A stretch of DNA of 42,361 bases from Macrostomum lignano (taxonomy: Eukaryota): the NCBI GenBank assembly GCA_002269645.1, contig NIVC01004548.1, forward strand, positions 1-42,361. The letters are read 5' to 3'. The position numbers and the translations under genes are program-made. Below, piece after piece: positions 3 to 22,050 of the stretch (position 1 is the stretch's first letter; each line of letters begins with the position of its first letter). Under the pieces are notes generated by a model, which was given only the letters and a program-made list of their open reading frames with translations, did not search any database and had not been told where the DNA came from.

Positions 3-3000
3 TTCATCGCGTGCTGCCGGACGGCGGTGCGCCGAGTGCAGAGCCGCTCGGAGGCCGTGCCGCTTGGCCTGGCGCTGCTCAGCCTGGACACCCTGGCCAT
101 TGTCTTCTGGGTGAGTCAGCCAGCTGGGTTTGCATGCTGCTATTGATAATCCCATTCTCATGAGCTAATCCCTGACCGTGACATGCATGCTGCTATTGAT
201 AATCCATTCTCATGAGCTAATCCCCTGACCGTGACATGCATGCTGCTATTGATAATCCCATTCTCATGAGCTAATCCCCTGACCGTGACATGCATGCTGC
301 TATTGATAATCCCATTCTCATGAGCTAATCCCCTGACCGTGACATGCATGCTGCTATTGATAATCCCATTCTCATGAGCTAATCCCCTGACCGTGACATG
401 CATGCTGCTATTGATAATCCCATTCTCATGAGCTAATCCCCTGACCGTGACATGCATGCTGCTATGATAATCCCATTCTCATGAGCTAATCCCCTGACCG
501 TGACACGCATGCTGCTATTGATAATCCCATTCTCATGAGCTAATCCCCTGACCGTGACATGCATGCTGCTATTGATAATCCCATTCTCATGAGCTAATCC
601 CCTGACCGTGACATGCATGCTGCTATTGATAATCCCATTCTCATGAGCTAATCCCCTGACCGTGACATGCATGCTGCTATTGATAATCCCATTCTCATGA
701 GCTAATCCCGTTCTCATGAGCTAATCCCATTCTCATTAACTAATCCCATTCTCATGAGCTCATCCCATTTTCATGAGCTAATCCCATTCTCATGAGCTCA
801 TCCCATTTTCATGAGCTAATCCCATTCTCATGAGCTAATCCCCTAACCGTGACATGCATGCTGCTCATAATACTACTGCTCATACTACTGCCTGCTCATA
901 CTACTACCCGTACTACTGCTCATTCTAATGCTCATACTTTTTTCTCATACTACTGCTCTTATAGGCGGCTTATACTACTTCTCATACTAATGCTCTTATA
1001 AGCGGCCTATACTACTTCTCATACTAATGCTCTTATAAGCGGCTTATACTACTTCTCATACTACTGCTCGTGCTGCTACTCGCACTGCTTGTCATACTTT
1101 CTGCTCTTACTAATAGTCATACTTTCTGCTCTTACTAATAGTCATACTTTCTGCTCTTACTAATAGTCATACTGCTACTCATCCTACTCGCCATATTCAT
1201 CCTGCTCATACAAAACGCAACTCCTGCTGCAGACCGGCTTTGTCTCGCTAGACTCCATCGCCCACTGCGACTGCCTGCTGCTTGACGGCCTTCTGGAGCG
1301 GCTGCCGGCGGAGGCCGCTTGCCGGCCGCTGCTGCCCGCCTGCTCCGCCTGGCCGCCCTGCTGTCGCCCGTGTGGCCCAGGCAGCCCGGCGTGCCGCTCC
1401 GCTCCCAGCTGCTGCAGCTGGTCTCCGCGCTCTCCTCCACTGCCACCGCGTCGGCGGCGACTTTACCGAATTCGGCGAGTCAGCAGCCGCCACCGCCTGA
1501 CAGTCTCCGCTCGGCGCTGCTGCTGCTGCTACACGCGCTGTCCCGCTGTGCCGACAGCCTCCTGCAGCTGTTTGCCGACCCCGGCCTGGCCGACTTCGCC
1601 CTTGAATGCCTTCAACGGTACGCCGTGTCCGTCGCCGAGGACAGAGCTGCGGCATCGGCTGAGACGGCCGTGGCCCTGACCGGCAATCTGCTGCTGCCGC
1701 ACTCGCCCTGCCGCCACCGCCTGCTCACCGAGTCCTGCCTGTCGCTGCTGCTCAACCTCCTGGCGACTGCTGCCTGCCCGCGCCGACCCGGCAGCGAAGT
1801 CTCCGCCTGAGCCTGGCCTGGGCGCTGGCCAACGCCGCCTACGACTGCGGCGACAGCGCCGCCTGGCAGCTGCTGGCCGACCGACTGCCGCAGCTCCTGG
1901 CCGCCATGCTGGACGAGCTGCAGCTGCCGCGCACCCAACTGGAGCCTTCGGTGACCATCGCAACTGGTGACGCCACCGCAGACGCCGCGCCTGCTGCAAA
2001 GCGCTGGAGGCGCTGCGCAACCTGCTGGCTGGCGGAGCTGACCGAGCCGACCGCCTGCTGTTGGCGCGGCCGCAGCTGCTGCCGCTGCTGGAGTCCGCGC
2101 TGGACCCCTGCCTGCCCGCCGAGTCCGTTCTGCGGCCCGCCGCCCTGGCCGCTCTGGTCAACGCCGCTGACGGAGGGGCGGCCGCCCGACTGGCGCTGCT
2201 GCCTCGGGAAGCCCTCCTGCTGCGTGTGCGTGACTGCCTGGTGAGCGACTGCCATTCCTGGAGCCTTCCCTGTGACAGTCCTGGAGCCTTCCCTGTGCCA
2301 GTCCTGGAGCCTTCCCTCTGCCATTCCTGGAGCCTTCCCTGTGCCCTTCCTGGAGCCTTCCCTGTGCCAGTCCTGGAGCCTTCCCTGTGCCAGTCCTGGA
2401 GCCTTCCCTGTGCCATTCCTGGAGCCTTCCCTGTGCCATTCCTGGAGCCTTCCCTGTGCCAGTCCTGGAGCCTTCCCTGTGCCAGTCCTGGAGCCTTCCC
2501 TGTGCCATTCCTGGAGCCTTCCCTGTGCCATTCCTGGAGCCTTCCCTGTGCCAGTCCTGGAGCCTTCCCTGTGCCAGTCCTGGAGCCTTCCCTGTGCCAG
2601 TCCTGGAGCCTTCCCTGTGCCATTCCTGGAGCCTTCCCTGTGCCAGTCCTTGGAGCCTTGTGCCAGTCCTGGAGCCTTCGTTGTGCACCTTACATTTAGA
2701 ACCTAAATTTTACAGCCTCACAAAGTATTAAATCAGATTTATTTAAGCATTTTTTATTGAATTGATACAGAAGCAAGTATATCACTAAGGCCAATGTTAA
2801 ATTCATTTCAGAGTCAACCGGAACTGCCTCTGCCGCAGCTGAGCCTGAGAATTTTCACAAATCTGATGGAGCCGCGACCGAATGCTGAAGCAGCTTCTGA
2901 GACGGAAGCTGACTTCGCTTGTGAGTTTGTGTTGATTGGAACGGTCCCTCCCAATGTACGCTCCCGACCACCAATGTACACTACCACCACCCCAATGTCC

Positions 3001-3380
3001 ACTCCCACCACCCCAATGTGCACTCCCACCACCCAATGTACGCTCCCGACCACCCCAATGTACACTCCCCACCACCCCAATGTACACTCCCCACCACATC
3101 AATGTACACTCCCCACCACATCAATGTACACTCCCCACCACCCCAATGTACACTCCCCACCACATCAATGTACACTCCCCACCACATCAATGTACACTCC
3201 CCACCACCCCATACACTCTCCTTACCACCCTTTTCAGCGCCGGACCCGCAGTGCCGCTCCGTGCTGGCGAAGCTGGGCTTCCCCGACCAGGTGGCGAAGC
3301 TGCTGGACCGCAGCCACCGCCATCCCATCCTGACTGCTGAGGAGACGCTCCGAGCGGAGCGAATGCTGAACCTGTTTTAA
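3..3380 (+). CDS. 5'-partial multi-exon gene for a Leu/Ala-rich helical (ARM/HEAT-like) protein
   Basis: Exons 3-110, 1233-2240, 2812-2920 and 3238-3380 join with GT..AG sites and matching phases (0,0,1). The joined product reads FIACCRTAVRR...IVFW|TGFVSLDS...RVRDCL|SQPELPL...DFA-S|PDPQCR...MLNLF*. Exon 2 needs three single-base frame changes (~1335, ~1805, ~2055). The family call rests only on composition and helical motifs such as LAWALANAAY. Confidence 0.65.
134..710. repeat. 54-bp minisatellite, about 10-11 copies, in intron 1 of the ARM-like gene
   Basis: Unit is gcatgctgctattgataatcccattctcatgagctaatcccctgaccgtgacat. It explains ORFs 158..457 and 433..717. Confidence 0.95.
700..1210. 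repeat. 19-bp sub-repeat (ctaatcccattctcatgag) followed by an irregular ctcatactactg-type repeat
   Basis: The 19-mer is a fragment of the adjacent 54-bp unit and repeats about 7 times to ~845. Degenerate ctcatactact/actttctgctcttactaatagtcat repeats then run to ~1210. Confidence 0.85.
2251..2680. repeat. 23-bp minisatellite, about 18 copies, in intron 2
   Basis: Unit is gcca(g/t)tcctggagccttccctgt and starts about 10 nt after the GT donor at 2241. It explains the PGAFPVP/GKAPG repeat ORFs. Confidence 0.95.
2950..3215. repeat. 22-23-bp C-rich minisatellite in intron 3
   Basis: Unit is approximately (c/t)caatgtacactccccaccac(c/a), about 11 copies, ending at the acceptor pyrimidine tract. Confidence 0.9.
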
Positions 3381-4024: not shown

Positions 4025-4580
4025 CATGCACTCGTTCCAGGCCTTCCCTGCCTCATCCCAAGGTACACTCGCTCCCGGCCCTCCCTGCCCAACACCAAGG
4101 TACACTCGCTCCCGGCCCTCCCTGCCCAACCCCAAGGTACACTCGCTCCCGGCCCTCCCTGCCCAACCCCAATGTACACTCGCTCCCGGCCTTTTCTGCC
4201 CAACCCCAATGTACACTCGCTCCCGGCCCTCCCTGCCCAACCCTAATGTACACTTGCTCCCGGCCCTCCCTGCCCAACCCCAATGTACACTCGCTCCCGG
4301 CCCTCCCTGCCCAACCCCAATGTACACTCGCTCCCGGCCCTCCCTGCCCAACCCTAATGTACACTCGCTCCCGGCCCTCCCTGCCCAACCACTATGTACA
4401 CTCGCTCCCGGCCCTCCCTGCCCAACCCCAATGTACACTCGCTCCCGGCCTTTTCTGCCCCACCCCATTGTACACTTCCGATTTTCCCTCTCTCACCCCA
4501 ATTTTCACTCGCTCCCGGCGTTCTCTGCCTCACCCCAACGTACACTCGCTCCCGACCTTCCCTGCCCCACCACAATGTAC
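4025..4580. repeat. 37-bp minisatellite, about 15 copies, between convergent gene ends
   Basis: Unit is cccaatgtacactcgctcccggccctccctgcccaac. It explains ORFs 4004-4635. Confidence 0.95.
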
Positions 4581-4694
4581 AGTCGTTCCTGAAACATGAC
4601 TTCTCAGAATAGATTTTATATTTATCGGCACTCAAATGAATGATAAAATGAAAGTCACAGTTTGGTCAGCTGCTGGTCACTGCGTTGATTTTTG

Positions 4695-6548
4695 TCAGTC
4701 TGCTCCTCCGTCGAAGCCACCATCAAAGTCGCCATTATAGTCCATGTTCTGATCGAACTGGTCATGGCTCATACCGTGATCGAACTGGTCATGGCTCATA
4801 CCGTGATCGAACTGGTCATGGCTCATACCGTGATCGAACTGGTCATGGTTCATGCCGTGATCAAATTGGTCATGGCCCATACCGTGATCGAACTGGTCAT
4901 GGCTCATACCGTGATCAAACTGGTCATGGCTCATACCGTGATCGAACTGGTCATGGCTCATACCGTGATCGAACTGGTCATGGCTCATACCGTGATCGAA
5001 CTGGTCATGGCTCATACCGTGATCGAACTGGTCATGGCTCATACCGTGATCGAACTGGTCATGGCTCATACCGTGATCGAACTGGTCATGGCTCATACCG
5101 TGATCGAACTGGTCATGGCTCATACCGTGATCAAATAAGTCATGGCTCATATCGTGATCGAATTGATCGTGATCCATGTCGTGATCGCTCTCATCTTGAT
5201 CATCGTCGTCCTCCTCGTCTGGGGAGCATCTGGGCTGCATCATTCTGTTGGCAATCCACGGCTTGGCGCGCCGAGGCTTAGCGCCCCACGACCGGCCGCC
5301 CCCAGACAGGCCTCCTCTGAACAGTCCCCCGAGCAAGCCGCCCACGAACAGCCCTCTGGACAGGCCATCCTTGGACGGGCCACCCCTGGACAGGCCACCC
5401 CTGGACAGGCCAGCCCTGGACAGGCCACCCCACTTCGGAATGCCAATATTGGGGCCGCTCCTGGCCAGGCCGCCGGCGAGGCCGCCAGCCAGGCCGCCGA
5501 CCATGGCCGAGCCCATAAGCTTGGGAACGCCCGAAAAGCTTTTCGGCGCACCGAAGCTCATTGGGCGCTGCTGGTGCATCATCGGCGCCTGCGTCTGACC
5601 GAACGGCATCGAGCCGCGGTAGGCGGGCATCGACACGCTGGGCTCCACTGGATAGAATAGCAGCAGCACGGTTGGCGCGAACTCATGGATAAGGCGCGCA
5701 GTCGAGTCGTTGTAGTTCAGGTCACGCCGGGTCGAGTCGTAGCCCAGATGGCCGGCCCAGCCGCTGCAGTGGTCCCGCAGTCTCTGCCTGAAGTATTGGT
5801 TGCTTCGCAGTCCGTCGTAGGTTTGTCTTCGGTAGGGCTCGGCCAGGGTCATGTAGGCCTGGTAGATCTGCTGTGTGCGCCTTGACGCCTCGTACTCGTT
5901 GCTAGGGTGCCATCTGAAATTACAGAGTGGATTGCTAATCCAGCCAGTATGCCAGCTGCAAGTACGGAGTGGATTGCGAATCTAGCCAGTATGCCAGCTA
6001 GAAGTACGGAGTGGATTGCTAATCTAGCCAGTATGCCAGCTGGAATAACGGAGTGGATTGCGAATCTAGCCAGTATGCCAGCTAGAAGTACGGAGTGGAT
6101 TGCTAATCTAGCCAGTATGCCAGCTGGAATAACGGAGTGGATTGCGAATCTAGCCAGTATGCCAGCTAGAAGTACGGAGTGGATTGCTAATCTAGCCAGT
6201 ATGCCAGCTGGAATAACGGAGTGGATTGCGAATCTAGCCAGTATGCCAGCTGGAATAACGGAGTGGATTGCGAATCTAGCCAGTATGCCAGCTGCAAGTA
6301 CGGAGTGGATTGCTAATCTTGCCAATATGCCAGCTGGAATTAAAGTGGATTGCTTATCTAGCTAATTATAGATTTAGTAGTGTAGCACGGACTGCTAATC
6401 TAAATTGAATATTAGTTCTAATATGTCAAAGCTTTTCAAAGCAGGCGAGAACTCACCGCTCACGCAGCTGTCTGTAGGCAGATTCGATGCTCTGCTTGCT
6501 GGACAAGCCCGACACGCCCAGCACCTCGTAGTAGAAATCCTCGGCCAT
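4695..6548 (-). CDS. J-domain-like protein (HPD replaced by HPS) with Gly-rich and His/Asp/Met repeat tail, about 436 aa
   Basis: Exon 1 (6548-6457) reads MAEDFYYEVLGVSGLSSKQSIESAYRQLRE, followed by a GTGAGT donor. A phase-2 intron leads to an acceptor at 5914 and exon 2 (5913-4695), R-WHPSNEYEASRRTQQIYQAYMTLAEPYRRQTYD, which continues in frame into track ORF 4695..5852. J-domain helices are recognisable (YYEVLGV, AYRQL, WHP, AY..L...RR..YD). Confidence 0.85.
4748..5180 (-). repeat. Coding 27-bp tandem repeat (DHGMSHDQF, about 16 copies)
   Basis: Plus-strand unit gatcgaactggtcatggctcataccgt lies in frame inside exon 2 of the HPS J-gene. Confidence 0.9.
5900..6350. repeat. 42-bp minisatellite, about 10.5 copies, filling the HPS J-gene intron and overlapping its 3' splice site
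   Basis: Unit is tagccagtatgccagct(g/a)gaa(t/g)(a/t)acggagtggattgc(g/t)aatc. The terminal degenerate unit contains the real acceptor at 5914-5915. Confidence 0.95.
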
Positions 6549-6778
6549 GAATCTTGCCGTCAGAGCGCGGATCAGTTTCCAGATTTTGTCTCAAATCTAT
6601 ATACGGACTCGGGATCGAATTCTTGCCATAGAGTGCATTTTGGTTTTCTTATTCAAATCGGCAGTTTTGAATGCAAAACGAAGGCTATTTTTTATTAAAT
6701 GAAATTGGTAAAAGTTAACAGAAACGCTGCTCAGGCTACTTCCAGTAGTCAGTTGATACTTGATGATTTGATTTCAGC

Positions 6779-7621
6779 TCAGCGCCGAGCCAGCTGGTTC
6801 AGAGCCGTGGTGGTCTGCTCCGTCTGCTCGCCGTTTTTGAACACCGTCGTCACCTTTACCCCGTTCTCGACTGTCGTTCTGACGACCGTCCGGTTGCCCT
6901 GCCCGTCTTCCGTGGTCGTCTCGCTGACCGCGCTGAACTGCCCGACAATTCCATCGTTGCCGACGTCGGCACTGCTGAACACTTCGTTATAGACGAAGAA
7001 CGGGTCGCGGAAGGCGCTCCAGAGGTTCCGGTGCAGCTGCTCGGCTGTCGTGCTGCTCCACCTGAAGCTGCCGCCACCCGGCCGCGGACCGTGGGAGCTG
7101 CGGCGAGTGCGGTCATAGTCCGCCCGGCGGCTCGGGTCCGACAGCACTTGGTAGGCCTCGGACAGCTTGCGGAATCGCAGCTCGGCCTCCGGTCGGTTGT
7201 TCGGGTTCTTGTCCGGGTGCCACCTGGAGCAGTGGTTGCAGTGCGCGGGTGAGTTGGGGTTGGCAATGACCGTTTTCCGCCTTTTCAGCGCATCTTGCTG
7301 AACTCATCTTTTTCTGGTGCTTTGCTGGCACTTAATTGATACATTTCTCGAGTCTTAATTACGAGCCTTTCGTACACCCTGCTGACATTCTTACAGGTAC
7401 TTCGCCTTTTGTCATTTACTGACATCACTAGACATCACGCACTTTACTGACATCTAGCATTCACAATGTCATCTTTACTTCTCTTTGGTATGAGGTATCT
7501 CTTTGGTATCTTTGGTAAAATCTCACCTTAGTGCCAGTCGCTTGTACGCCTCCTTAATCTCCTGGGCCGTGGCCGATGGAGGCACCTCCAGAATGGCGTA
7601 AAATTCCTCGGGGTTGGACAT
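6779..7621 (-). CDS. DNAJB6: Canonical class-B J-protein of the DNAJB6/B2/B8 subfamily, about 179 aa
   Basis: Exon 1 (7621-7527) reads [31 protein letters not shown]. After a phase-2 GT-AG intron, exon 2 (7223-6779) reads [41 protein letters not shown] is intact. It also has [12 protein letters not shown] (like DNAJB6 helix V) and a C-terminal TTVENG..V..NG beta region. An AATAAA lies at 6691-6696 on the minus strand. The symbol denotes subfamily, not proven orthology. Confidence 0.92.
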
Positions 7622-8073
7622 GGTTTCGTCTTTGCTAATCTTACTATTCTAATTAGCATCACTTGTGTGCTTTCCAGAATATGCACGCAAATACGGTTGT
7701 GCCATAGACTACGCTTGCGCGAGCTAAAATACTTTAATTAGCACATGTCGTAAGGTGTCGTAGCGAGTGTTGAAAAGGATTGTTGGTTTAGTGCAAAATC
7801 AAGATCTGTATATTTTTTTTTAACTAAAATGTCTTGGGTTGACCTTATAAACAAAAAAATCTTGAATGCTACTGAAGCTCAGTGAATTGAAATGAATTAT
7901 TCTTTTTAAAACGCTTTTAATAACAGAGGTTCGGTGTCCGGAAATTTGGTTTGCAGGTCGAGTGAGAGTTAGAAAATGAGAGTGCACCGATCAAAAGCAC
8001 TCGTCGTAAGCAGACTTTGCTCTCTTATCTTCCAGTTCCAAATCCTTTATAACTTTTGGCTGTCCTCCACCAT

Positions 8074-10985
8074 TCACTTGTTAGTCTTGGTACTTTTTGT
8101 TGTCAACACGGATGTTGTTTTGTGCGAACCACCGCGGTGCGAGCTGGGACCACCATGGTGCGAGCTGGGACCACCGTGGTGCGAGCTGGGACCACCGTGG
8201 TGCGAGCTGGGACCACCATGATGCGAGCTGGGACCACCATGCTGTGAGCTGGGACCACCACCGCGCTGCGATATGGGACCAACCGAGACTGTCATTGCCT
8301 TGGAGACGTTGGTCAACTTGGTGGTCAGCCCCTTGATTCTCATGTCCACCTCCTTGCCGTTGCGGGTTACATTAAGGGTCATCTCACCGCCAGTTGACTG
8401 CACGGTGGTAATTTCAATCTTGTTGCCGAACGGGTCCACATTCTTGGTGTGACGGGTGCCCTTGGCGATGTGCCGCTGCACCAGCTGCTCGCAGAAGGCC
8501 CGGTCGCTGAGGTCAGACGGCGAGTTGCAGACGGCCTCGACGTGCACTTTGTACGGATCCCGCAGAGAGATTAGGTTGGACGGGAAAGAGAGCGCCTCTC
8601 CGCTCTCCGACTTCTCGCTGAGGAAGTTCTTCCTGAGTGCCGTCTCGAATTCCTCGGTTAACTGGTCCAGTTCCATGGTGGATTCCTGCTTGACTCGCGA
8701 CTCCTTGGATTTAACGTCGTTCTTTTCGAGGTCCTGTGCGTTAGACTTCAAAAGGCACTGCAGGTAGCGTTTGCGTTTTTCGTTGCAGTACAGAATCTGG
8801 AAGGCCTCGCTGATGCGGAAGAAGTGCCGCTCAGACTCCGCCTTGTTGTCCGGGTTGTTCTCCGGGTGCCACCTTGGTGTCAGATTGGCAAGGGAGTGAT
8901 TTGGTCGGAGTGAGGCAATGGGAAGCTGATAATCAGGGTTGAAACGCAAATTGATTTCTGGTGTACAGGTGCTGCTTGAGATCGAGATTGAATAGAAGAA
9001 TTTACGCATTGAGGAATAAAAGCGACGCTTGAATACGGCGTACATTAGTTGAACACTATTGACAGTAGCATAATAACACCGAATCTGCAACTTGTATTCG
9101 CGATTTCGCATGAATGAAATATTTAAATTTCCACAACTGACTGTTTGTTTGTTATTAATCACAATTTGTTAGTTTAGTTAGTCAGTGAGTCACAGTCACA
9201 GACCCCTAATTGGACTATCTGGTCGCTACAAAACACTCGTGAAATTTGACTCCTAGCATTGCAGTTTTTGGAGGAGAGCAGAATAGCTCTGCGGTTAGCC
9301 CTAGCCCCTGAGGCATACATGCCTGACAATGAGAACCGGAGTCGCTATACAACCTGTGTGAACGTGTGCCTGCATGCATAAGCCTCGTATTCGTTTGCGA
9401 GAGTGCATCAGTGGAACAGGCATGACTGCTTGGATCCTCGCCGGCTGTGGATAGACTGTTGTCACAATTTTTGCAGTACCAAAGCCACTGCAAACTACGA
9501 GTAATAAGGCATTCTGGTCAGCTCAACGCACTCTTCACCGGACATTCTGGTCAGCTCAACTCACTCTTCATCAGACATTCTGGTCAGCTCAACGCACTCT
9601 TCACCGGACATTCTGGTCAGCTCAACTCACTCTTCATCAGACATTCTGGTCAGCTCAACTCACTCTTCATCAGACATTCTGGTCAGCTCAACTCACTCTT
9701 CATCAGACATTCTGGTCAGCTCAACGCACTCTTCACCGGACATTCTGGTCAGCTCAACTCACTCTTCATCAGACATTCTGGTCAGCTCAACGCACTCTTC
9801 ACCGGACATTCTGGTCAGCTCAACTCACTCTTCATCAGACATTCTGGTCAGCTCAACGCACTCTTCACCGGACATTCTGGTCAGCTCAACGCACTCTTCA
9901 CCGGACATTCTGGTCAGCTCAACGCACTCTTCACCGGACATTCTGGTCAGCTCAACGCACTCTTCACCGGACATTCTGGTCAGCTCAACGCACTCTTCAC
10001 CGGACATTCTGGTCAGCTCAACGCACTCTTCACCGGACATTCTGCTCAGCTCAACGCATTCTTCACCGGACATTCTGGTCAGCTCAACGCACTCTTCACC
10101 GGACATTCTGGTCAGCTCAACGCACTCTTCACCGGACATTCTGGTCAGCTCAACTCACTCTTCATCAGACATTCTGGTCAGCTCAACGCACTCTTCACCG
10201 GACATTCTGGTCAGCTCAACGCACTCTTCACCGGACATTCTGGTCAGCTCAACGCACTCTTCACCGGACATTCTGGTCAGCTCAACGCACTCTTCACCGG
10301 ACATTCTGGTCAGCTCAACGCACTCTTCACCGGACATTCTGGTCAGCTCAACGCACTCTTCACCGGACATTCTGCTCAGCTCAACGCATTCTTCACCGGA
10401 CATTCTGGTCAGCTCAACGCACTCTTCACCGGACATTCTGGTCAGCTCAACGCACTCTTCACCGGACATTCTGGTCAGCTCAACGCACTCTTCACCGGAC
10501 ATTCTGGTCAGCTCAACGCACTCTTCACCGGACATTCTGGTCAGCTCAACGCACTCTTCACCGGACATTCTGCTCAGCTCAACGCATTCTTCACCGGACA
10601 TTCTGGTCAGCTCAACGCACTCTTCACCGGACATTCTGGTCAGCTCAACGCACTCTTCACCGGACATTCTGCTCAGCTCAACGCACTCTTCACCGGACAT
10701 TCTGATCAGCTCAACGCACTCTTCACCGGACATTCTGGTCAGCTCAACGCACTCTTCACCGGACATTCTGATCAGCTCAACGCACTCTTCACCGGACATT
10801 CTGATCAGCTCAACTCAATCTTCATCAGACATTCTGGTCAGTTATCAATCTCGATCAAGAACGCTCCAATTTCAATTATTTGTCCTTGCGACTCACTTAG
10901 TGGCCAATCGCAGGTAAGCATCTTTGATTATCTTCGGGTCGGAAGTTTGCTGCAGCTCCAGAACTTGATAGTAGTCCAACTTCAT
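8074..10985 (-). CDS. DNAJB6-like paralog with HPE instead of HPD, about 295 aa
   Basis: Exon 1 (10985-10897) reads MKLDYYQVLELQQTSDPKIIKDAYLRLAT with a GTGAGT donor. A 2-kb phase-2 intron leads to exon 2 (8872-8074), K-WHPENNPDNKAESERHFFRISEAFQIL...LRDPYKVHVEAV...DPFGNKIEITTV...NG, ending in a GGPSSHH repeat tail. Confidence 0.85.
8133..8262 (-). repeat. Coding 21-bp repeat (GGPSSHH, about 6 copies) in the HPE paralog tail
   Basis: Plus-strand unit gtgcgagctgggaccacc(g/a)tg, in frame in ORF 8074..9162. Confidence 0.9.
9510..10842. repeat. 33-bp minisatellite, about 40 copies, inside the HPE J-gene intron
   Basis: Unit is cattctggtcagctcaac(g/t)cactcttca(ccg/tca)ga, with two main variants. 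It explains ORFs 9447..11051, 9825..10139 and 10155..10799. Confidence 0.95.
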
Positions 10986-11707
10986 TGTGGCCTGCTTTCT
11001 CCGAAACAAATCTCAAGTTCGCTGCAAGGGCCACCCGTCTTGAGCTGTTAAGTACTTCATCAGCTCTACTTAAAGATGGCCTTAGCTACTTCACCCGTGA
11101 CCGAACTCGAATAGTCTGTGGTCTTATTTGTCAAACATCTTCACTTCCTCGCCAAGACAGAAAATAATCGTCTTGATCCACGGGCTTCTAGAATTAAAAA
11201 CCTGGAATGGAAAGCCGATTCTGCTAACCATTGGCCTTTAAGTACCTTGAATACAGAATCGCAGAAAATGATTTTCTCACTTGAACTTCCAATATACTCA
11301 TAAAATGTAGTTATAGTATTCGTTTAATTAGCTGATGCAGATTATATGAGCGTAATGGGTTCAAATGTTTATCCGAAAAGTCCAGGTGTGGAGTGGTCAA
11401 TTTATTGAATAAAACTGAAAGATCATAACTCTCCTATCTCATTTGATGCACTTTCAACTTCTATTCTCGTAGATTTCGAGCTGTCTTTGGAGCTGTGCCC
11501 TTGATATTATTGAGTCCCTTTTACGGCGATATTCCGTGTACACCTGGCAGTCTCGGAAAGAGTAAAGCTCAGAAAAACCAAAAGGTATAAAATGCCCGGT
11601 CTTAAAATGATGCCTCAAGAAAGCAAAATCCAAATATCGTAATATCTTCCATTTAAATAATAACAGAAAATTATGATTAGAAGTGTATAGGCCGTGAGAT
11701 TCGGTCG

Positions 11708-12778
11708 TCACGGGTCTCTGGGCAGCCGCCGCATGCCTGGCGGCGGGTCAGGCGCCTCATCAATGATGATGATGTGCCCGGCCCCGCGCTTCGTCTCCCG
11801 CTCCTCCTCCTGCCAGTCCTCCGGCTTCACGCTGACGCTGAAGTTCTGCACCAGCTTGCCGTTCCGCTTCACCTTGATGTTCTTCATGCCATCGGTGTAG
11901 TCAATCGTGGTGATCACCGTCTTGTTGCCGAATACGTCAAGGACGTCGGTGAGCTTGGCCATGGAGGCAATGTGCCACTCCACCAGCTGCTCGCAGTAGG
12001 TCCACGGACTCTTGTTGGGCTTCGCGCCGCCAACCACCTCGTTGTAGACGCGGTACGGGTTGCGTAGCGACAGCAGCGTCTCGGGGAAGCACGTGACGGT
12101 GTTTCCCCCCACCTGCTGAATCATGAGGTTTTTGCCCAGGGCCGTCTCGTCCGGCAGTCCCTTGGGCTGCGCGTGCGCGTACTTGTGACCCAGGACCACC
12201 GGCTCCTCTGCCGCTTTCGACCCGCTCTCAGACAGTACGCTGCTCAGGCTGCTGCTACTTTCGCTTCTGGCCTTCTCAACTTGTACTGGGCCGGCGCATT
12301 CCTCGTTGAGTAACTGCATGGAGGAACCGGGCTTTTTCACAAAGGGCTTGGCCGCCTTCTTCAGCGCCTTTTTGTAGTGATACCTGCGCTTGTGGTCCGA
12401 GAGGATTTGATAGGCCTCGCTAATCCTGCGAAAGCGCTTCTCTGCCCGGGCTTCGTAGCCCGGATTGTTGGCCGGGTGCCACCTGGAGACCGGTTTGCGG
12501 GCACAGAAGCTTTGCTGAATCATGCTGATTGAGGTATGAGTGGGTATGTTTCTAACACCTGTCCTAGTCTCAAGAGGTACGAGTAAGAATACATGTCTAA
12601 TACCTGCCCAAGCCTCTGGACTTGCTTCAGGCCTCAATATTTCGATTTGGCGTTTAAGTCTGATTATTTAACGCTAGCAAATTACTCACTGCTCAGCGAG
12701 CTGTTTGTAAGCCTCGGTGATTTCGTTGGCCTTTGCGGCTCTCGACAGCCCCAAGATGTCGTAGTAGTCCAGCTTCAT
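11708..12778 (-). CDS. DNAJB6-like paralog with HPA instead of HPD, about 287 aa
   Basis: Exon 1 (12778-12690) reads MKLDYYDILGLSRAAKANEITEAYKQLAE with a GTGAGT donor. After a phase-2 intron, exon 2 (12482-11708) reads Q-WHPANNPGYEARAEKRFRRISEAYQILSDHKRRYHY...LRNPYRVYNEVV...DVFGNKTVITT...NG. Confidence 0.87.
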
Positions 12779-13367
12779 GCTGGCCAACGCGGCTTGCGAA
12801 GGCAAATTATTGCGGCAGCTCAGGCAGCCTCAAGTCACTGCCATGGGTTGGGCTGAGCACGCCACGATTAACCTTGTCACCGTCTCGGTCATAGACTATA
12901 AAAATGGTGATAATCTCCAAAACCGAAGAGGAAGTTTGCTGTCCAAATAATTATTTTTTACTACTCACTCGTCAGTTCTTTGCAGTTTAGAATTTAGTGC
13001 TATACTTGTAAAAACAAAAATTCCCTACTCGCCAATGCATTTTGCAGCGAAAACCTGCAGCGTCCAGCAAAAATTGTCACGATTTGCCAGTGCAGCGTTA
13101 GCTGTCCATGCCCCAGCTATAGCGAATATCGTATCTCTCTCAGGCTTTCGAGTCAATACTGCCCCTGGGCAATGCGCAGCACAGCTCTACCCCACAGTGT
13201 GCAGTCGATCGCCTTGCCGCCCTTTGCACTGCAGTATCATCTGTACGAGCGATCGCGCTACGTGTAAAAAAGATAAACGATCTGCCTATGAGACCACCTG
13301 CGCTAATTTAGTTTCAATTTTGTTTTCCAGGTAAAATAAACGCTGAGCCAACGTCAAGCAGACAGAG

Positions 13368-16300
13368 ATGCTTCGATTGCTGCTCCTGCTACTGAGCTTG
13401 GCGGCGGCCTGCCAGGCTGATGAAGACTTCCCGTTTCGCAATGTCAGCCTCCCGTGGCCGGACCGGGCCGACGATCTGGTTGGCCGCCTGACTGCTCAGG
13501 TGAGGGGGGAAGGCGGGCAATGCCGAGCCAGGAAAGCCTGCCCCAGTTTTCGCCTGTTTTTGCATCGTAAAAACATTGCGTTCTTGAATTCAACATCCAC
13601 AGTTTTTAGTTCAAGCATTCGGAGGGAGTTGAAGCGACTGAAAGGTCGGGGGTTCGATTCTCGACCCACTCTGAACAATTTGTGTCCTTGAGCAAGACAC
13701 TTAACTCTGCATTGCTTCAGTCAAACCAGTTGTGAAATGAGTACCAGCATTAACTAGGGTAATTGAGGGTGTGTGTGGCGACCCTCCAGTCCTTGGGACT
13801 GAACAGCCGTACGCAGCCTTCAGATGCGCAGCACAATAGCTGCGGCTGAGCTGTCGGTTGCACATCTGCGCATTGGGGCAGGTGTAGTCAATTATTATTA
13901 TTATATAAAAACATCCGGCCAATCTGTAATCACCCTAGAAATCTTCTGCACAATTACTCTTGAAAATAGGTTCATAGGATGTAAAAAAGAGTCACATAAA
14001 CACCCTTAAATCGTTCACAAAAATCCGCATAAACATCCCCGAAAATGGCTGGATGAAGACGTTGAAATCGTTCACATAAAGCGTCAGGTAGATGTCCGCA
14101 TAAAAAAACCTCTAAAATATATGGATGCAACCCAACCAAAATATCGGCCGGTAACTTGTGCTGATGCCCATTAACCACATTTTGGCATCAATGACCCAAA
14201 AGTTGCATAAACGCCCCACAATGTTCGCAAAAAATCTTGAAAACAAACCGGCAAGCCCCCACCGCCCGCAGGAGCTGGTGCAGCAGCTGGCCAAGGGCGG
14301 CGGCGGCCCGTTTGGTGGCCCGGCGCCCGCCATCGCCCGCCTTGGCATCGGGCCGTACCAGTGGAACACTGAGTGCCTGCGCGGCGCCGTCAAGTCCGGC
14401 CAGGCCACCTCCTTCCCCCAGGCGGTCGGCTTGGCCGCCACCTTCGATACGGACATTCTCAGCCAGGTTGGCCGCGCCACCGGCCTGGAGGTTCGCGCCA
14501 AGCACAACGACTTCGTCGCCAAGGGCGACTACGGCGATCACACAGGGCTCACGTGCTTCGCTCCGGTGATTAATATCCTGCGGCACCCACTTTGGGGCCG
14601 CAACCAGGAGACCTACGGGGAAGATCCTCACCTGAGCGGTGTGCTGGGGGCCGCCTACGTTGGAGGACTGCAGGTTGGCTCTGGCAACATTGTGATCCAT
14701 TGACCCGGGATTCCCTCATCCAATGACCCTGAATTCTCTGACCCAATGACCCTGAATTCTCTGACCCAATGACCCTGAATTCGGTGACCCAATTACCCTG
14801 AAATCTCTGATCCAATGACCGTGAATTCTGTGTCTCAATAACCCTGACAGTTAAAGGACTTGTGCAAGCTTTTAACCTTGGTGACTACTTTTTTGAAAAG
14901 CTCATCTCACAAGTGACCTTATAGTTCGAGTCCTCTGCTCACCTGCCCGCAGGGCAACGCCACTGACCGCTACCTGCTCACAGGCGCCGGCTGCAAGCAC
15001 TTCGCCGCCTACGACGGCCCCGACAGCTATCCGGAGTCGCGTTTTGGCTTCAACGCGCTGGTCAGCCAACAGGATCTGGAGCAGACTTTCCTGCCGCAGT
15101 TCCGGCGCTGCGTTCAGGCCGGCAGTGTCAGCGTGATGTGCAGCTACAACGCCATCAACGGGGTGCCTGCCTGCGCCAACGCTCAGCTGCTGCGCGAAGT
15201 CCTTCGGGAGCGCTGGAACTTCACCGGCTACGTTGTGAGCGACGCCGGAGCGCTGGAGTTCGCCATCCTCTTCCACAAATACTTTGCGGACCGCCTGGTG
15301 CGCTGGGGTGACTTTTACTGCTGCCTCGCTCATTGGAAGACCTTGAGTTCCTAATATTCATCGTGCAGAGAACTTCACCATCTCCCTTATCATCCGTTCT
15401 TATCTCCCCGTGGCTCCTCATCTCCCCTCTCTTCCTTCTCTGTCTCCCAAAGAAAACGTCATTGAAAACAACTCACTAGTGACTCTAGCGATTCTCTACA
15501 GCAACTCCAGCACGCCTCAGATACGACTCTGCGGCCCCAGAGTCACTTGCGTCTCTCCCTAGAGTTGCAGACAATAAAACACATCGAATTGACTTTTTGG
15601 CAACTTGTACCGTAACATATTGTCTTTTAGGACTCGTCTAGAGTCGCTTTCTTCGTATTTTACCTGTGTTACCTGCAACGACTCTAAAACTATTTTGACG
15701 CGACGCTTCTTGGCCTAGGTGCCGTTTTTATCGGGTCTCTCTCCTCTTCGTTTTTCTCCCAACCCTCCCAACCAATTTTTCCCGCCCGCAGAGCTCTGCC
15801 ATCGGGTCCCTGAGAGCAGGCGTCAACCTTGACCTGTCCGCCTGCCCCTACGAGTCCTGCGTGGTCTTTGAGCAGCTCTCAGTAGCACTGAACACCAGCC
15901 GGATATCCGAGGCGGAGCTGCGGGCCGCCGCCTGGCCGCTGTTCCTTGCCCGCCTGCGGCTGGGTGAGTTCGACCCGCCGGCCCTGAACCCCTACTCCAG
16001 CCTTCGGCCCGACCAGTTCATCCAGTCCGCCGCTCACCGGGCGCTCAGCTTGACGGCCGCCCAGACCTCGCTGGTGCTGCTGAAGAACCTCGGCGGCTTT
16101 CTGCCCGACGGCCTGATAAAGCGCCCGGCCTCCGCCTGGGCGTGGTCGGCCCGCTGTCCGACGACATGTCGCTGGTCTACGGCGACTACTCGCCGAATCG
16201 GATGCCGCAGTTTGAGCAGCCGCTGCTGCCGGCGCTCAAGGAGCGATTCGGTGCTGATAAAATCAGGTGTGATCGCTTGGGAGTGGAGACGGAAGGGTAG

Positions 16301-18407
16301 TAAAATGAGTTGGCAGATGTCTAATATAGCAGATGTTAGAGTTTGAAGCCGAGAGCAGGGAAGAGAGGAGAGAAGAAAGCGTAAGACAAGAGTGTGAAGA
16401 GCGGAGAAGTTGAACAAAGTGAAACAGAGTGAAGAGAGTGGAGCGAATGGAGGGAGCGGCGTAGAGAAGAGAGCGGATGAAAGAGAGGAGAGAGAGTTCA
16501 ATGGAGAGGCATTTCTGATCGCAGCCACCCAGCGCAGCCGCCCTGATCTCGCCCTTCAGTCACGCGACCTACTGCACAGACGGCGGAGTCTATTGCACTC
16601 GACAGGATCCGGCCGCGGTGTCTTCGCTGATCGCGCAGAGCGACGTTCTGTTAGCCGTTGTTGGCACCAGCGTTGACATCGAGACCGAGGCGCTGGACCG
16701 GCGGCAGCTCACCCTGCCGGACGGGCAGCTTGCCCTGCTGCGGTTGCTGACCGCCAGCGGCAGGCCGGTTGTGCTGGCCGTGGTGTCCGGAGCTCCCGTC
16801 GGCCTGGACGAGGCGATTGGCAATGACAGCGTACGAGCGGTGGTCTGGTGCGGCTATCCCGCGCAGACCTTCGGACCGGTGCGTGGGTGCAGGTTTGGAA
16901 TGTGGGGGTTTTGATTGTGTGGGGGTTGACGGTGTGCAGTGCATATGGTGGTATTTAATAATGTTATTAGTGCCGTGTCTATTTTCCATTTTAGCCTCTA
17001 AGAGCCAAAAGTTGAAAATGATTTCAAGAAGAAGTTTTTGAAAAAAACGTTAAGCCTTTAACCTGATATCTAAAATGAATACGTTTTTGTCGCTGCGGGT
17101 CGTTTGATTGTCTTCTACCATTTCTGATTACCTAACGCTCTCACTCCTACTTGCAGTAGGGGAGGTTGCTTCAAATACCAACTGATTCACTCTTGAACTG
17201 GCAGGCGCTCATCAACTTGCTGACCGGGCGCTACTCGCCATCGGCCGCCCTGCCGTTCACCTGGCCGTCGGAGCGCGCCCAGCTGCCCAGCATCACCGAC
17301 TACGATCTGGCTGCGCGCAACCAGACCTACCGCTTCTCCGAGCCCTGGTCGGGCTCGCCTCCGCCTCTGTTCCGCTTTGGCCAGGTGAGCTCCGTCTGGG
17401 ATCCCTGTTGTTTGGGATCTGTTGCGAGCAGAAAGCCGAAGCTTTGTTCGAAACTTTGGGCCGCAACTTTAATCTCCGGAAGCGGATCCAAAGTCAAGTC
17501 CCAAGATCAAACCAACTACAATGATAACTTCTTGTAGAATTCGACAGGAAACACCGATAATATGGGTGATTTTTGTCTTGAGAAGTCTTAAGAAAACAGT
17601 CTGAGAAGATGCCAGTCTTAGCATAACACACTCAATTACCAAGTTCTTCAACCAAACAGTGCTGCCAATGCTAAGAGCGCTTTTGTATCTCAGTAAATCA
17701 GAGCTTGATTAAAACCAGAGCTCCAGAGTTCCTGCGCGCGATCCCTGGGTACTGCGCGATCCTCGCTCGTGGGGACCAACAAGACGCAGTGTGCGCTCTG
17801 CACTGCCTGATCCTAGTCACTGGAACGGGCTGTCTCCTACGAGTACTCGTAGAAAAGCGATGAAATCGTAGTTCGCCGGTAATAATCGATTAGAAACTCA
17901 AATTGGGATGAAACTCAGTAGGAATTCAACGAATATGTCCCTTGCGTTTGGTGGGTCCTAGCGGGACTGCATCATCTGTGCTCAACTTGGCTCAAACCGA
18001 TGCCCCACAGGGCCTGTCCTACTGCCGCTTCTCGCTGACCCACCTGACGGCTCCGCGAGCATCTCGGCTGGCCAAGACCTCCACCTCAGCCTGCGGGTAG
18101 CCGCCAACGCTTCGACTAGCGGCATCTCCGAGTGCCCGATTGTGCTCAAAGCGTACCTGACCCCGCCGACTGGCGTGGGAAGAAATCCAACCATCTGGTT
18201 GGCCAGCTTTCGCAAATTCCGGCTGCAAAGCGGCTCCTCGGCATCGACAGTGAGCCTCAGCGTCCTGGCCAGGGACATGCAGCTGTGGGACGGCAGCGCC
18301 GGCCTCATGCGCAGCTGCCCGGCAACTATGGGCTGCTGGTTGGCGACTATTTCGACGAGAGTTGCGCCGACTGCAGGGTGCGGACAAGCTTTAAAGTTGT
18401 GTCGTGA
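13368..18407 (+). CDS. Secreted glycoside hydrolase family 3 beta-D-xylosidase/beta-glucosidase with Fn3-like C-terminus (7 exons)
   Basis: Exons are 13368-13499, 14272-14673, 14953-15297, 15792-16266, 16560-16878, 17205-17384 and 18011-18407, all GT-AG with matching phases. It has a signal peptide (MLRLLLLLLSLAAACQA) and GH3 motifs RLGI..YQWNTECL, WGRNQETYGEDP, CKHFAAY, MCSYNAING, GYVVSD (nucleophile Asp), LVLLKN, ETEALDR and FGQGLSY. Single-base frameshifts occur near 16125, 18058 and 18320. Confidence 0.93.
13610..13921 (+). mobile_element. tRNA-derived SINE-like element, copy 1 (GH3 intron 1)
   Basis: A B-box-like ggttcgattc is followed by tgtgtccttgagcaagacacttaac and an (ATT)n stretch. 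The body is clearly homologous to 39100-39178 plus 39678-39872. The 5' boundary is approximate. Confidence 0.75.
14700..14845. repeat. 23-bp tandem repeat, about 6 copies, in GH3 intron 2
   Basis: Unit is tgaccctgaattctctgacccaa. Confidence 0.85.
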
Positions 18408-21249: not shown

Positions 21250-22050
21250 GCCTCTGCCTCCTCGGTGCTTCACCCTCTGCTTTAGCTTTCCCGGTGCTTC
21301 ACTGAACTCTGCTTTAGCTTCGCGGTGCTTCACTGACCACTGCTTTAGCTTTCCCGGTGCTTCACTGACCTCTGCTTTAGCTTTCCCGGTGCTTCACTGG
21401 TCTCTGCTTCCCTGGTGCTTCACTTGCCTCTGCTTTCCCAGTGCTTCAAGTTCGTCTCGGCTTCCCGGTGCTTCAAGTTGGTCTCTGCTTCCCCGGTGCT
21501 TCAAGTTGGTCTCTGCTTCCCCGGTGCTTCAAGTTGGTCTCTGCTTCCCCGGTGCTTCAAGTTGGTCTCTGCTTCCCTGGTGCTTCACTGGTCTCTGCTT
21601 CCCCGGTGCTTTAAGTTGGTCTCTGCTTCCCCGATGCTTCAAGTTGGTCTCTGCTTCCCTGGTGCTTCACTGGTCTCTGCTTCCCCGGTGCTTTAAGTTG
21701 GTCTCTGCTTCCCCGGTGCTTCAAGTTGGTCTCTGCTTCCCCGGTGCTTCAAGTTGGTCTCTGCTTCCCTGGTGCTTCACTGGTCTCTGCTTCCCCGGTG
21801 CTTTAAGTTGGTCTCTGCTTCCCCGGTGCTTCAAGTTGGTCTCTGCTTCCCCGGTGCTTCAAGTTGGTCTCTGCTTCCCCGGTGCTTTAGGTTGGTCTCG
21901 GCTTCCCGGTGCTTCAAGTTGGTCTCTGCTTCCCCGGTGCTTCAAGTTGGTCTCTGCTTCCCCGGTGCTTCACTGGTCTCTGATTCCCCGGTGCTTCACT
22001 GGCCTCTGATTCCCGGTGCTTCACTGACCTCTGCTTCCCCGGTGCTTTAT
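21250..22050. repeat. 26/28-bp minisatellite in the probable 5'-UTR intron of prominin
   Basis: Units are ggtctctgcttccccggtgctt(c/t)aagtt (28 bp) and ggtctctgcttccctggtgcttcact (26 bp). The array lies between a GTAAGC donor at 21023 and an acceptor at 22968-22969. It explains ORFs 21389-22056. Confidence 0.9.

What the first reader, a model, noticed from the sequence alone, without database searches (positions are those of the whole stretch)
4695..12778. Tandem quartet of DNAJB6-type J-proteins in which the HPD motif reads HPA, HPE, HPD and HPS
Seen: four head-to-tail minus-strand genes each have a ~30-codon exon 1 and a phase-2 intron immediately before W-H-P, so they arose by local duplication. 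Only the 7621 copy keeps HPD. The HPA and HPE copies keep a helix-V-like motif (LRNPY/LRDPY versus FRDPF) and the C-terminal beta region. Known: the HPD Asp is needed to stimulate Hsp70 ATPase, DNAJB6-class proteins oligomerise, and helix V autoinhibits the J-domain. Inference: three independently altered, still-intact paralogs beside one active copy could be a co-expressed system of Hsp70-uncoupled holdases or hetero-oligomeric modulators of the active chaperone. The ORF track does not show this because the J-domains are split by introns.
Basis: partly seen in the sequence, partly recalled or inferred. Interest (0 to 1): 0.8.

Follow-up and report, generated by a model that had tools for sequence, protein, structure and literature searches.

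The report
Testis J-protein array, three lacking HPD
A flatworm (Macrostomum lignano) contig carries four neighbouring, testis-expressed relatives of the DNAJB6 chaperone, and three have lost the aspartate that normally switches on Hsp70; this adds a natural example to the known class of "J-like" proteins but is not a new kind of system.

Summary
The window is Macrostomum lignano contig NIVC01004548.1. At 4695-12778 on the minus strand lie four two-exon genes. Each has a GT-AG phase-2 intron directly before W-H-P, and each has a Pfam DnaJ domain above threshold. The motif reads HPA, HPE, HPD and HPS.

- **Copy C (HPD)** aligns over its full length with DNAJB6b-deltaST.
- **Copies A and B** are sister paralogs. 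They keep a degenerate helix-V motif and a four-strand C-terminal sheet but have no S/T-rich region.
- **Copy D** keeps only a J-like domain. Its "HPS" comes with a 4-residue loop deletion, not a simple D-to-S change.

All four reading frames are intact and strongly codon-biased (GC3 0.73-0.83 against 0.38-0.44 in flanking DNA). The copies are old and fast-evolving (J-domain identity 32-50%).

Published tables link transcriptional unit Mlig000041 to DnaJ transcripts (best hits DNAJB2/DNAJB6/mrj). These are testis-region-specific, germline-enriched and higher in grouped worms.

The functional reading is untested. HPE is the one replacement reported as tolerated. A and B lack the S/T region that DNAJB6 needs against polyQ. 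HPD-less "type IV" J-proteins and testis-specific class B paralogs are already known. I score it as a new member of a known kind, of moderate interest.

The parts
11708..12778 (-). Gene A (HPA), 287 aa, two exons (12778-12690, 12482-11708). It equals GenBank PAA47171.1 / BOX15_Mlig000041g5.
   Evidence: Model. Exact match to the deposited protein. Pfam DnaJ 72.3 bits. AlphaFold2 gives J domain pLDDT 80-95, a helix at 172-179, a helix at 189-203 and four strands at 207-247. The best PDB fold match is DNAJB6b-deltaST 6u3r.
12470..12481 (-). W-H-P-A codons of gene A (TGG CAC CCG GCC), directly after the phase-2 acceptor.
12032..12067 (-). Degenerate helix-V-like motif of A (LRNPYRVYNEVV, aa 169-180).
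   Evidence: Alignments. Predicted helix with pLDDT about 84 inside an otherwise disordered linker. The phmmer match to DNAJB6 helix V is not significant (0.5 bits).
11828..11932 (-). C-terminal beta region of A (FGNKTVITT...RNGKLV..., aa 214-248).
   Evidence: Four predicted strands. hhalign against 16 canonical DNAJB6-like C-terminal domains gives P = 9.5e-4 in the expected register.
8074..10985 (-). Gene B (HPE), 295 aa, two exons (10985-10897, 8872-8074). Its 2024-nt intron holds a 33-bp x 40 tandem repeat. Not in the GenBank annotation.
   Evidence: Pfam DnaJ 61.5 bits. Best PDB J-domain matches are DNAJB8 and DNAJB6.
8860..8871 (-). W-H-P-E codons of gene B (TGG CAC CCG GAG).
8530..8565 (-). 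Degenerate helix-V-like motif of B (LRDPYKVHVEAV, aa 133-144).
8329..8430 (-). C-terminal beta region of B (FGNKIEITT...RNGKEV..., aa 178-211).
8128..8259 (-). Coding 21-bp minisatellite of B, giving a His-rich tail (GGPSSHH x 6).
6779..7621 (-). Gene C (HPD), 179 aa, two exons (7621-7527, 7223-6779). A minimal DNAJB6b-like protein. Not in the GenBank annotation.
   Evidence: Pfam DnaJ 91.7 bits. phmmer aligns residues 6-178 with 4-186 of 6u3r (DNAJB6b-deltaST), E = 4e-24. De novo transcripts RNA1509_17685 and RNA1509_12481 carry a DnaJ domain scoring 91.6 and 91.3, a level only C reaches. AATAAA lies 83 nt after the stop.
7211..7222 (-). W-H-P-D codons of gene C (TGG CAC CCG GAC).
6977..7012 (-). 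Helix-V motif of C ([12 protein letters not shown], aa 103-114).
4695..6548 (-). Gene D (HPS plus a 4-residue loop deletion), 436 aa, two exons (6548-6457, 5913-4695). It has a J-like domain, then a G/L-rich segment, then 16 units of HDQFDHGMS.
   Evidence: A 436-residue gene is annotated at these bounds. Pfam DnaJ 45.9 bits. Gap at HP[DKNP]. The J domain is predicted with lower confidence, pLDDT 58-78. Repeat units.
5901..5912 (-). W-H-P-S codons of gene D (TGG CAC CCT AGC).
4740..5171 (-). Coding 27-bp minisatellite of D (16 units of HDQFDHGMS; a His/Asp-rich tail).

Best explanation
The region is a head-to-tail array of four old, fast-evolving paralogs of a non-canonical class B J-protein (the DNAJB6/DNAJB2/DNAJB8 type, fly mrj). 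It lies in Macrostomum lignano, belongs to one annotated transcriptional unit (Mlig000041) and is expressed in the testis region and germline.

Copy C is a compact DNAJB6b-like protein. It has a J domain with HPD, helix V and a C-terminal beta sheet, so it is expected to act as an ordinary Hsp70 co-chaperone.

A and B are sister copies. Asp is replaced (HPA, HPE), the next residue is changed (K to N), and in A the basic face of helix II is weakened. They keep a recognisable but degenerate helix V and the C-terminal sheet. They have an extra amphipathic helix in place of the S/T-rich region.

D keeps only a J-like domain with a shortened HP loop, followed by low-complexity His-rich repeats.

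Inferred mechanism: A and D cannot trigger Hsp70 ATP hydrolysis in the canonical way, so they act as J-like ("type IV") proteins in spermatogenic cells. They would be client-binding or scaffold subunits, or partners of C. B may retain some Hsp70 coupling.

Shown: gene structures, domains, motif states, intact and codon-biased reading frames, and testis/germline expression of DnaJ transcripts from this unit. Inferred: loss of ATPase stimulation, any holdase or modulator role, and which paralog each published transcript represents.
For: - Gene models and motifs.
- Pfam DnaJ above cut-off in all four.
- Organism, and exact identity of A to an annotated protein. The annotation is transcript-derived (PMC5730564).
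- C aligns over its full length with DNAJB6b-deltaST.
- The J domains of A, B and D best match DNAJB6, DNAJB8 and HCG3.
- The A model has helix V, an extra helix and a four-strand sheet, and its top fold hit is 6u3r.
- hhalign of the A/B C-terminus against canonical C-terminal domains gives P = 9.5e-4.
- GC3 is 0.73-0.83 in all four. It is 0.38-0.44 in introns and spacers and 0.70-0.73 in the window's other coding ORFs.
- The shared intron position is absent from two other DNAJB6-like genes.
- Testis-region, germline_FACS and OvI_up annotation of Mlig000041.g1, g2 and g4. Their source transcripts are DnaJ/DNAJB2/DNAJB6/mrj.
- Background on HPD loss and type IV J-domain proteins: PMC13254874.
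Against: - No ortholog or homeolog could be retrieved. There is therefore no dN/dS and no test of whether HPA, HPE or HPS is conserved across species.
- B and C are not in the GenBank annotation.
- The CDS lengths in the published table (1377, 483 and 1350 nt) do not map one-to-one onto my four models. Expression of each individual variant copy is therefore not proven. Only a C-type J domain is directly identifiable in the de novo transcripts.
- HPE can be functional in another system.
- Fast evolution and testis expression also fit relaxed constraint.
- The AlphaFold2 models rest on 3-4 sequences and have mean pLDDT of 57-59.
Confidence: 0.6

Rival explanations
1. The variant copies are duplicates under relaxed constraint. 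They are transcribed in the permissive testis environment and are drifting towards loss. The HPD changes are then accidents with no selected function.
For: - All four J domains are only 32-50% identical to each other and 45-49% identical to human DNAJB6, while canonical DNAJB6-like J domains are 57-70% identical across phyla.
- No full-length relative of A or B was found among 1.84 billion representative proteins.
- Testis-region genes evolve fast in Macrostomum (PMC7336406).
- M. lignano has an inflated set of 123 HSP40 genes (PMC9559072).
- D's J domain is the most eroded: 45.9 bits and a loop deletion.
Against: - The reading frames of 287, 295 and 436 codons are intact, although the paralogs have diverged by more than 50% in protein sequence.
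- GC3 is as high as or higher than in the window's other coding ORFs and about twice the flanking GC.
- Splice sites are canonical.
- Conservation between A and B is concentrated in the J domain, helix V, the extra helix and the beta region, while the linker is free.
- A and D have transcript-based annotation.
Confidence: 0.2
2. One or more variant copies, B (HPE) above all, still stimulate an Hsp70, perhaps a co-evolved testis Hsp70. The array would then be four working co-chaperones with different client-binding tails.
For: - HPE is reported as the only tolerated replacement, in E. coli DjlB and DjlC with HscC (PMC13254874).
- B keeps several basic residues of helix II (KIIKDAYLRLATKW).
- The J fold of A is predicted with high confidence.
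Against: - HPN and QPD abolish stimulation, and the Asp is the most conserved feature of J-domain proteins.
- All 46 N-terminal J domains of canonical DNAJB6-like relatives had WHPD.
- A has also lost helix-II basic residues (EITEAYKQLAEQ).
- D has a 4-residue loop deletion.
Confidence: 0.12
3. The variant codons are assembly or sequencing errors, and the real genes all read HPD.
For: The assembly is long-read based, and raw reads could not be inspected here.
Against: - The differences are base substitutions in three separate genes, each embedded in many other substitutions.
- D's change is an in-frame 12-nt deletion that keeps the frame.
- The deposited transcript-derived protein for A reads HPA.
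Confidence: 0.02

Closest known systems
Human DNAJB6b (with DNAJB2 and DNAJB8; Drosophila mrj): non-canonical class B J-domain proteins
   Same: - The J domain is N-terminal, and it is the best PDB sequence match for all four copies.
- C aligns end to end with DNAJB6b-deltaST.
- The helix V motif and a short C-terminal beta sheet sit in the same order in A, B and C.
   Different: - None has a long S/T-rich region or a G/F-rich region.
- A, B and D lack the HPD Asp, whereas all 46 canonical relatives checked had WHPD.
- A and B have an extra helix (CEQLV..HIA).
- D has no beta domain, and has His-rich repeats instead.
Type IV / J-like J-domain proteins (HPD corrupted): Plasmodium falciparum type IV JDPs, human DNAJB13 (HPL), Pam16/Tim16
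   Same: - A J fold with an altered HPD, in otherwise class-B-like proteins (PMC13254874).
- DNAJB13 is also tied to the male germ line: it is a sperm axoneme component and its loss causes male sterility.
- Pam16 pairs with an active J protein (Pam18).
   Different: - DNAJB13 is a canonical class B protein with two beta-sandwich domains, and Pam16 is mitochondrial. Neither is DNAJB6-type.
- Here the variant copies sit in one tandem array next to an HPD-bearing paralog.
- No interaction between the copies has been shown.
E. coli DjlB and DjlC (HPE) with HscC
   Same: A natural HPE motif, as in gene B.
   Different: These are bacterial class C proteins with a specialised, divergent Hsp70 partner. 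Nothing here shows that M. lignano has such a partner.

Membership tests
J-domain protein (Pfam PF00226) | A J-domain match above the Pfam gathering score. | tested here: met
   A scores 72.3, B 61.5, C 91.7 and D 45.9 bits against a cut-off of 27.8.
Functional Hsp70 co-chaperone JDP | An intact His-Pro-Asp tripeptide in the loop between helices II and III. | tested here: not met
   C has HPD. A has HPA, B has HPE, and D has HPS with a 4-residue loop deletion. The feature is met only by C.
Functional Hsp70 co-chaperone JDP | Stimulation of Hsp70 ATPase activity. | not testable with these tools
   This needs purified proteins. Literature background only.
Non-canonical class B (DNAJB6/B2/B8 type) | An N-terminal J domain closest to the DNAJB6/B8/B2 J domains. 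| tested here: met
   The top PDB sequence hits for all four are DNAJB6, DNAJB8 and HCG3, with DNAJB2 also high for A and C.
Non-canonical class B (DNAJB6/B2/B8 type) | Helix V (the autoinhibitory helix) motif FR[DN]PxxVFxEFF after the J domain. | tested here: inconclusive
   - C has [12 protein letters not shown], which is close.
- A has LRNPYRVYNEVV and B has LRDPYKVHVEAV. These keep the R-[DN]-P and V..E positions only. A helix is predicted in A with pLDDT 84, but the phmmer match is not significant.
- D has a possible relic, ARLIHEFA, with a helix predicted at pLDDT about 70.
- Docking onto the J domain could not be read from the tool output.
Non-canonical class B (DNAJB6/B2/B8 type) | A serine/threonine-rich region, needed for polyQ suppression by DNAJB6. 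| tested here: not met
   A and B have a helix (CEQLV..HIA) at that place. C has only [10 protein letters not shown] has none. C resembles the deltaST deletion variant.
Non-canonical class B (DNAJB6/B2/B8 type) | A C-terminal beta-sheet domain (NGKKIxTKKVxENGxExVxVxEDG). | tested here: inconclusive
   - C is met by full-length alignment to 6u3r.
- A and B have four predicted strands, top Foldseek hit 6u3r at E = 1.5e-7 over 259 columns, and hhalign P = 9.5e-4 but probability only 22%.
- D is not met.
Type IV / J-like JDP | A recognisable J fold with a corrupted HPD motif. | tested here: met
   A, B and D each have Pfam DnaJ above cut-off with Asp absent. The J fold of A is predicted at pLDDT 80-95 and that of D at 58-78.

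The most novel reading that the evidence does not exclude
The HPD-less copies (A, B and D) are selected partners of the adjacent HPD copy C in spermatogenic cells. Through their retained J-like domain or C-terminal sheet they would form mixed assemblies. These would gate or redirect C's access to Hsp70, as Pam16 does for Pam18, or would hold sperm-specific clients without engaging Hsp70. That would be a natural, genetically tractable case in which loss of the HPD Asp was positively selected.
Probability: 0.1. Interest if true: 0.65.

Novelty: new member of a known kind. Interest (0 to 1): 0.4.

Why it matters
A 2026 review of J-domain proteins says it is still enigmatic whether natural deviations from HPD are accidents or are selected (PMC13254874). 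This array places one HPD copy and three variant copies side by side in one transcriptional unit. It is expressed in one tissue of an animal for which published work describes transgenesis and knockdown. If the variant copies prove to be conserved in other Macrostomum species and to be needed for sperm formation, the array would be a convenient test case for what J-like proteins do. If not, it is one more example of fast turnover of testis-expressed gene duplicates in a genome that already has 123 HSP40 genes (PMC9559072).

Tried and rejected
**1. Finding orthologs or homeologs for dN/dS.**
- Three word-index searches were run. A found only itself. C's best hit was 43% identical. D found nothing and is not in the collection.
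- One full HMMER scan with an A+B+C profile found no other full-length A/B-type protein.
- The genome and metagenome locus tools cover prokaryotes and viruses, so I did not use them. No dN/dS was possible.

**2. Exact look-up of B, C and D.** None is in the collection.

**3. Assigning published gene ids to paralogs.**
- The CDS lengths for Mlig000041.g1, g2 and g4 are 1377, 483 and 1350 nt.
- The stop-to-stop frame of spliced D is 450 codons, which fits 1350.
- A 160-aa internal-Met ORF of D fits 483.
- A 458-aa product fits nothing I could build, including all exon-1/exon-2 cross-splices. The assignment is left unresolved.

**4. Searching other Macrostomum supplements for Mlig000041.** Nothing was found in PMC5816591, PMC5946080, PMC5730564 or PMC12896417, and no files are held for PMC12801592. 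Other sub-clusters of Corset cluster 12500 are not in the stored text.

**5. Synonymous versus non-synonymous changes among D's 16 repeat units.** The count is 8 versus 12. This is too few and too edge-biased to mean anything.

**6. Pseudogene reading.** Rejected as the main explanation because of the intact frames and GC3.

**7. A weak J-like tblastn hit at 31838-31620.** It is an enolase-superfamily gene, not a fifth copy.

Full report
**What the window is.** Searching the spliced product of the 12778 gene returned a 100% identical 287-aa protein. It is PAA47171.1, [quoted passage not shown], on a contig of exactly 42361 bases. The locus look-up names the record as NIVC01004548.1 of assembly GCA_002269645.1. 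The window is therefore a whole contig of the free-living flatworm M. lignano. According to its authors, more than half of that genome is repetitive (15% simple and tandem repeats), and the assembly is partly redundant because of a recent genome duplication (PMC5730564).

**Checking the observation.** I read 4400-13100 on the minus strand and assembled the four genes by script.
- A: 12778-12690 and 12482-11708, 287 aa.
- B: 10985-10897 and 8872-8074, 295 aa.
- C: 7621-7527 and 7223-6779, 179 aa.
- D: 6548-6457 and 5913-4695, 436 aa.

Every intron starts GTGAG and ends AG. Each interrupts the codon just before Trp after its second base. After the junction the proteins read WHPA, WHPE, WHPD and WHPS (coordinates). 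All four pass the Pfam DnaJ threshold, at 72.3, 61.5, 91.7 and 45.9 bits against a cut-off of 27.8. tblastn finds no fifth copy. A weak hit near 31.7 kb is an enolase-superfamily gene. The finding's description and coordinates are correct.

**What the four proteins are.**
- Copy C aligns from residue 6 to 178 with the NMR construct DNAJB6b-deltaST (6u3r), E = 4e-24. The match covers the J domain, the helix-V region and the C-terminal sheet.
- The J domains of A, B and D also find DNAJB6, DNAJB8 and HCG3 as their best solved relatives.
- A and B are sister copies. Both start MKLDYY, both have HPxNNP, and both share a helix CEQLV..HIA and the block FGNK..ITT....G.....V.RNGK.V.
- An AlphaFold2 model of A (3-sequence alignment, mean pLDDT 59) gives a confident J domain (pLDDT 80-95) and a disordered linker at 77-166. 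It then gives an isolated helix at 172-179 over the helix-V-like motif (the 171-180 block averages pLDDT 84). A further helix follows at 189-203, and four strands at 207-247 with pLDDT about 70-84.
- The best fold match of that model in the PDB is again 6u3r, at E = 1.5e-7 over 259 aligned columns.
- A profile comparison of the A/B C-terminus with 16 canonical DNAJB6-like C-terminal domains gives P = 9.5e-4 in the expected register, but only 22% probability. I treat the beta region of A and B as probably homologous but diverged.
- None of the four has the long S/T-rich segment of DNAJB6, and C resembles the deltaST deletion.
- D has no such C-terminus. After the J-like domain comes a possible helix-V relic (ARLIHEFA), predicted helical at about pLDDT 70. 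A Gly/Leu-rich stretch and 16 units of HDQFDHGMS follow.

**The HPD positions.**
- In 47 relatives that carry the strict helix-V motif FR[DN]PxxVFxEFF, all 46 with an N-terminal J domain read WHPD. The Asp is thus effectively invariant in canonical members of this subfamily. The list is the top 150 hits of a profile that itself contains WHP, so it is not an unbiased census.
- The codons are GCC (A), GAG (B), GAC (C) and AGC (D).
- For A and B, an ancestral GAC, GCC or GAG each needs two steps. Independent loss is therefore not demonstrated. The shared K-to-N change at the next position suggests that the loop was already altered in their common ancestor.
- For D, HMMER and MAFFT both open a 4-residue gap at HP[DKNP]. 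D has a shortened loop rather than a point substitution, and its J domain is predicted with lower confidence.
- A has also lost basic residues of helix II (EITEAYKQLAEQ against DIKKAYRKLALK).

**Age and origin of the array.** J-domain identities are 47% (A-B), 50% (A-C), 38% (B-C) and 32-42% (D against the rest). That is no higher than their identity to human DNAJB6 (45-49%). Canonical DNAJB6-like J domains from distant animals are 57-70% identical to one another. These are therefore old, fast-evolving duplicates.

The shared intron position still argues for common descent of all four, D included. One DNAJB6-like gene in another animal genome (locus L002) is intronless across its first J domain. 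Another (L003) has introns after residue 21 and residue 58, not before Trp.

**Are they live genes?**
- The reading frames are intact despite more than 50% protein divergence.
- GC3 is 0.83, 0.73, 0.83 and 0.73. It is 0.38-0.44 in the introns and spacers and 0.70-0.73 in three other Pfam-supported coding ORFs of the contig.
- AATAAA or ATTAAA follows the stops of A, B and C.
- The GenBank annotation was built from RNA-seq transcripts and then filtered to drop non-coding transcripts and those overlapping repeats (PMC5730564). It contains A exactly as I modelled it, and a 436-residue gene with D's bounds. B and C are absent from it.

**Expression.**
- In the supplement of Brand et al. 2020 (PMC7336406), Mlig000041.g1, g2 and g4 of the v3 transcriptome are annotated "Testis", germline_FACS and OvI_up, meaning higher in worms kept in groups of eight than in isolated worms.
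- Positional read counts rise from 16, 12 and 20 in the first listed fragment to 551, 536 and 783 in the next. I read these as head only, and head plus testis region, from the serial amputation design, without seeing the column headers. The three were classified "Testes".
- Those three genes are linked to de novo transcripts RNA1509_17685, RNA1509_12481 and RNA1509_16655.
- In the supplement of Grudniewska et al. 2016 (PMC5173321), RNA1509_17685 and RNA1509_12481 carry a Pfam DnaJ domain scoring 91.6 and 91.3. Their cluster rows list best human hits DNAJB2 and DNAJB6 and fly mrj.
- Only C reaches that score in my scan, so the HPD copy is certainly transcribed.
- A is Mlig000041g5, and the only J genes on the contig are these four. 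The testis annotation therefore belongs to this array.
- I could not assign g1, g2 and g4 to individual paralogs from the CDS lengths given. Expression of each variant copy separately therefore rests on the GenBank annotation (A and D) and not on these tables.

**How it most likely works.**
- C should work as a small DNAJB6-like Hsp70 co-chaperone in spermatogenic cells.
- Replacements such as HPN or QPD abolish ATPase stimulation (PMC13254874), so A and D are expected not to activate Hsp70 canonically. They are J-like, or "type IV", proteins.
- B is uncertain. HPE is the one replacement the same review reports as tolerated, in E. coli DjlB and DjlC with HscC.
A, B and D lack that region.
- Suppression of alpha-synuclein aggregation by DNAJB6 does need a working J domain (PMC5567236).
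- A scaffold, client-binding or C-modulating role is possible but entirely inferred.

**Comparison with what is known, and novelty.**
- HPD-less J proteins are an established category. Examples are 13 type IV JDPs in Plasmodium falciparum, human DNAJB13 (HPL, a sperm and cilia axoneme component) and Pam16.
- From my own knowledge, not tested here: testis-specific class B paralogs are also familiar, for example mammalian DNAJB8, DNAJB3 and DNAJB7.
- M. lignano has an unusually large HSP40 set of 123 genes (PMC9559072), and its testis-region genes evolve fast.
- What is specific here is a DNAJB6-type array in which three of four neighbours have lost the Asp while staying intact, next to an HPD copy. 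I found no paper describing it.
- I file it as a new member of a known kind, with moderate interest (0.4). Its value would rise if orthologs showed constraint.

Noticed in passing
window 9510-10841 (intron of gene B) and 5908-6362 (intron of gene D): These are large intronic minisatellites: 33 bp x 40 copies at 96% identity in B, and 42 bp x 11 copies in D. The first creates a spurious 534-aa ORF on the + strand at 9447-11051.
   Followed up: partly
window 4740-5171 (gene D) and 8128-8259 (gene B): These are in-frame coding minisatellites that give His-rich tails: 16 units of HDQFDHGMS in D and 6 units of GGPSSHH in B. Such tails could bind metal ions or drive self-association. Most D units are identical, so the expansion is recent or homogenised.
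   Followed up: partly
window 4029-4589 and 2950-3211: A 37-bp x 15 repeat lies just downstream of gene D and a 22-bp x 12 repeat lies further on. Both contain a GTGTACATTGGGG core. Further arrays lie at 131-709 (54 bp), 2250-2686 (23 bp) and 21380-22047 (28 bp).
   Followed up: no
window 13368-16630 (+), 22932-25613 (+), 29382-30134 (+), 31437-32511 (-): Unrelated neighbours on the contig: an annotated glycosyl hydrolase family 3 gene, a prominin-like ORF, the transmembrane part of a Cys-loop ligand-gated channel, and an enolase-superfamily (MR_MLE) gene.
   Followed up: partly
window 4695-6548 (gene D): D has no Pfam family in the precomputed gene table, and its protein is absent from the searchable collection. 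A direct hmmscan nevertheless gives DnaJ at 45.9 bits. Automated pipelines would miss this J-like domain.
   Followed up: yes
L002 3001-3873 and 16100-16768 (GCA_964199285.2, OZ285894.1): Another animal genome has two intronless DNAJB6-like coding stretches about 13 kb apart. They are fused into one 497-aa gene model (P0020), and both carry HPD. Tandem duplication of this gene type is therefore not unique to M. lignano.
   Followed up: partly
window 6549-6778, 7622-8073, 10986-11707 (spacers between the four genes): The intergenic spacers are short: 230, 452 and 722 nt. Gene A is the fifth gene of one annotated transcriptional unit, Mlig000041. In M. lignano such units are cut into mRNAs by spliced-leader trans-splicing and polyadenylation (PMC5730564). 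The array may therefore be transcribed as one precursor.
   Followed up: no
proteins P0021, P0025, P0029, P0035, P0046, P0050: Several unrelated proteins among the top profile hits carry two J domains in tandem reading HPE plus HPS, HPS plus HPS, HPE plus HPM, or HPE plus HPE. Their organisms are unknown. HPD variants seem to cluster in multi-J proteins.
   Followed up: no
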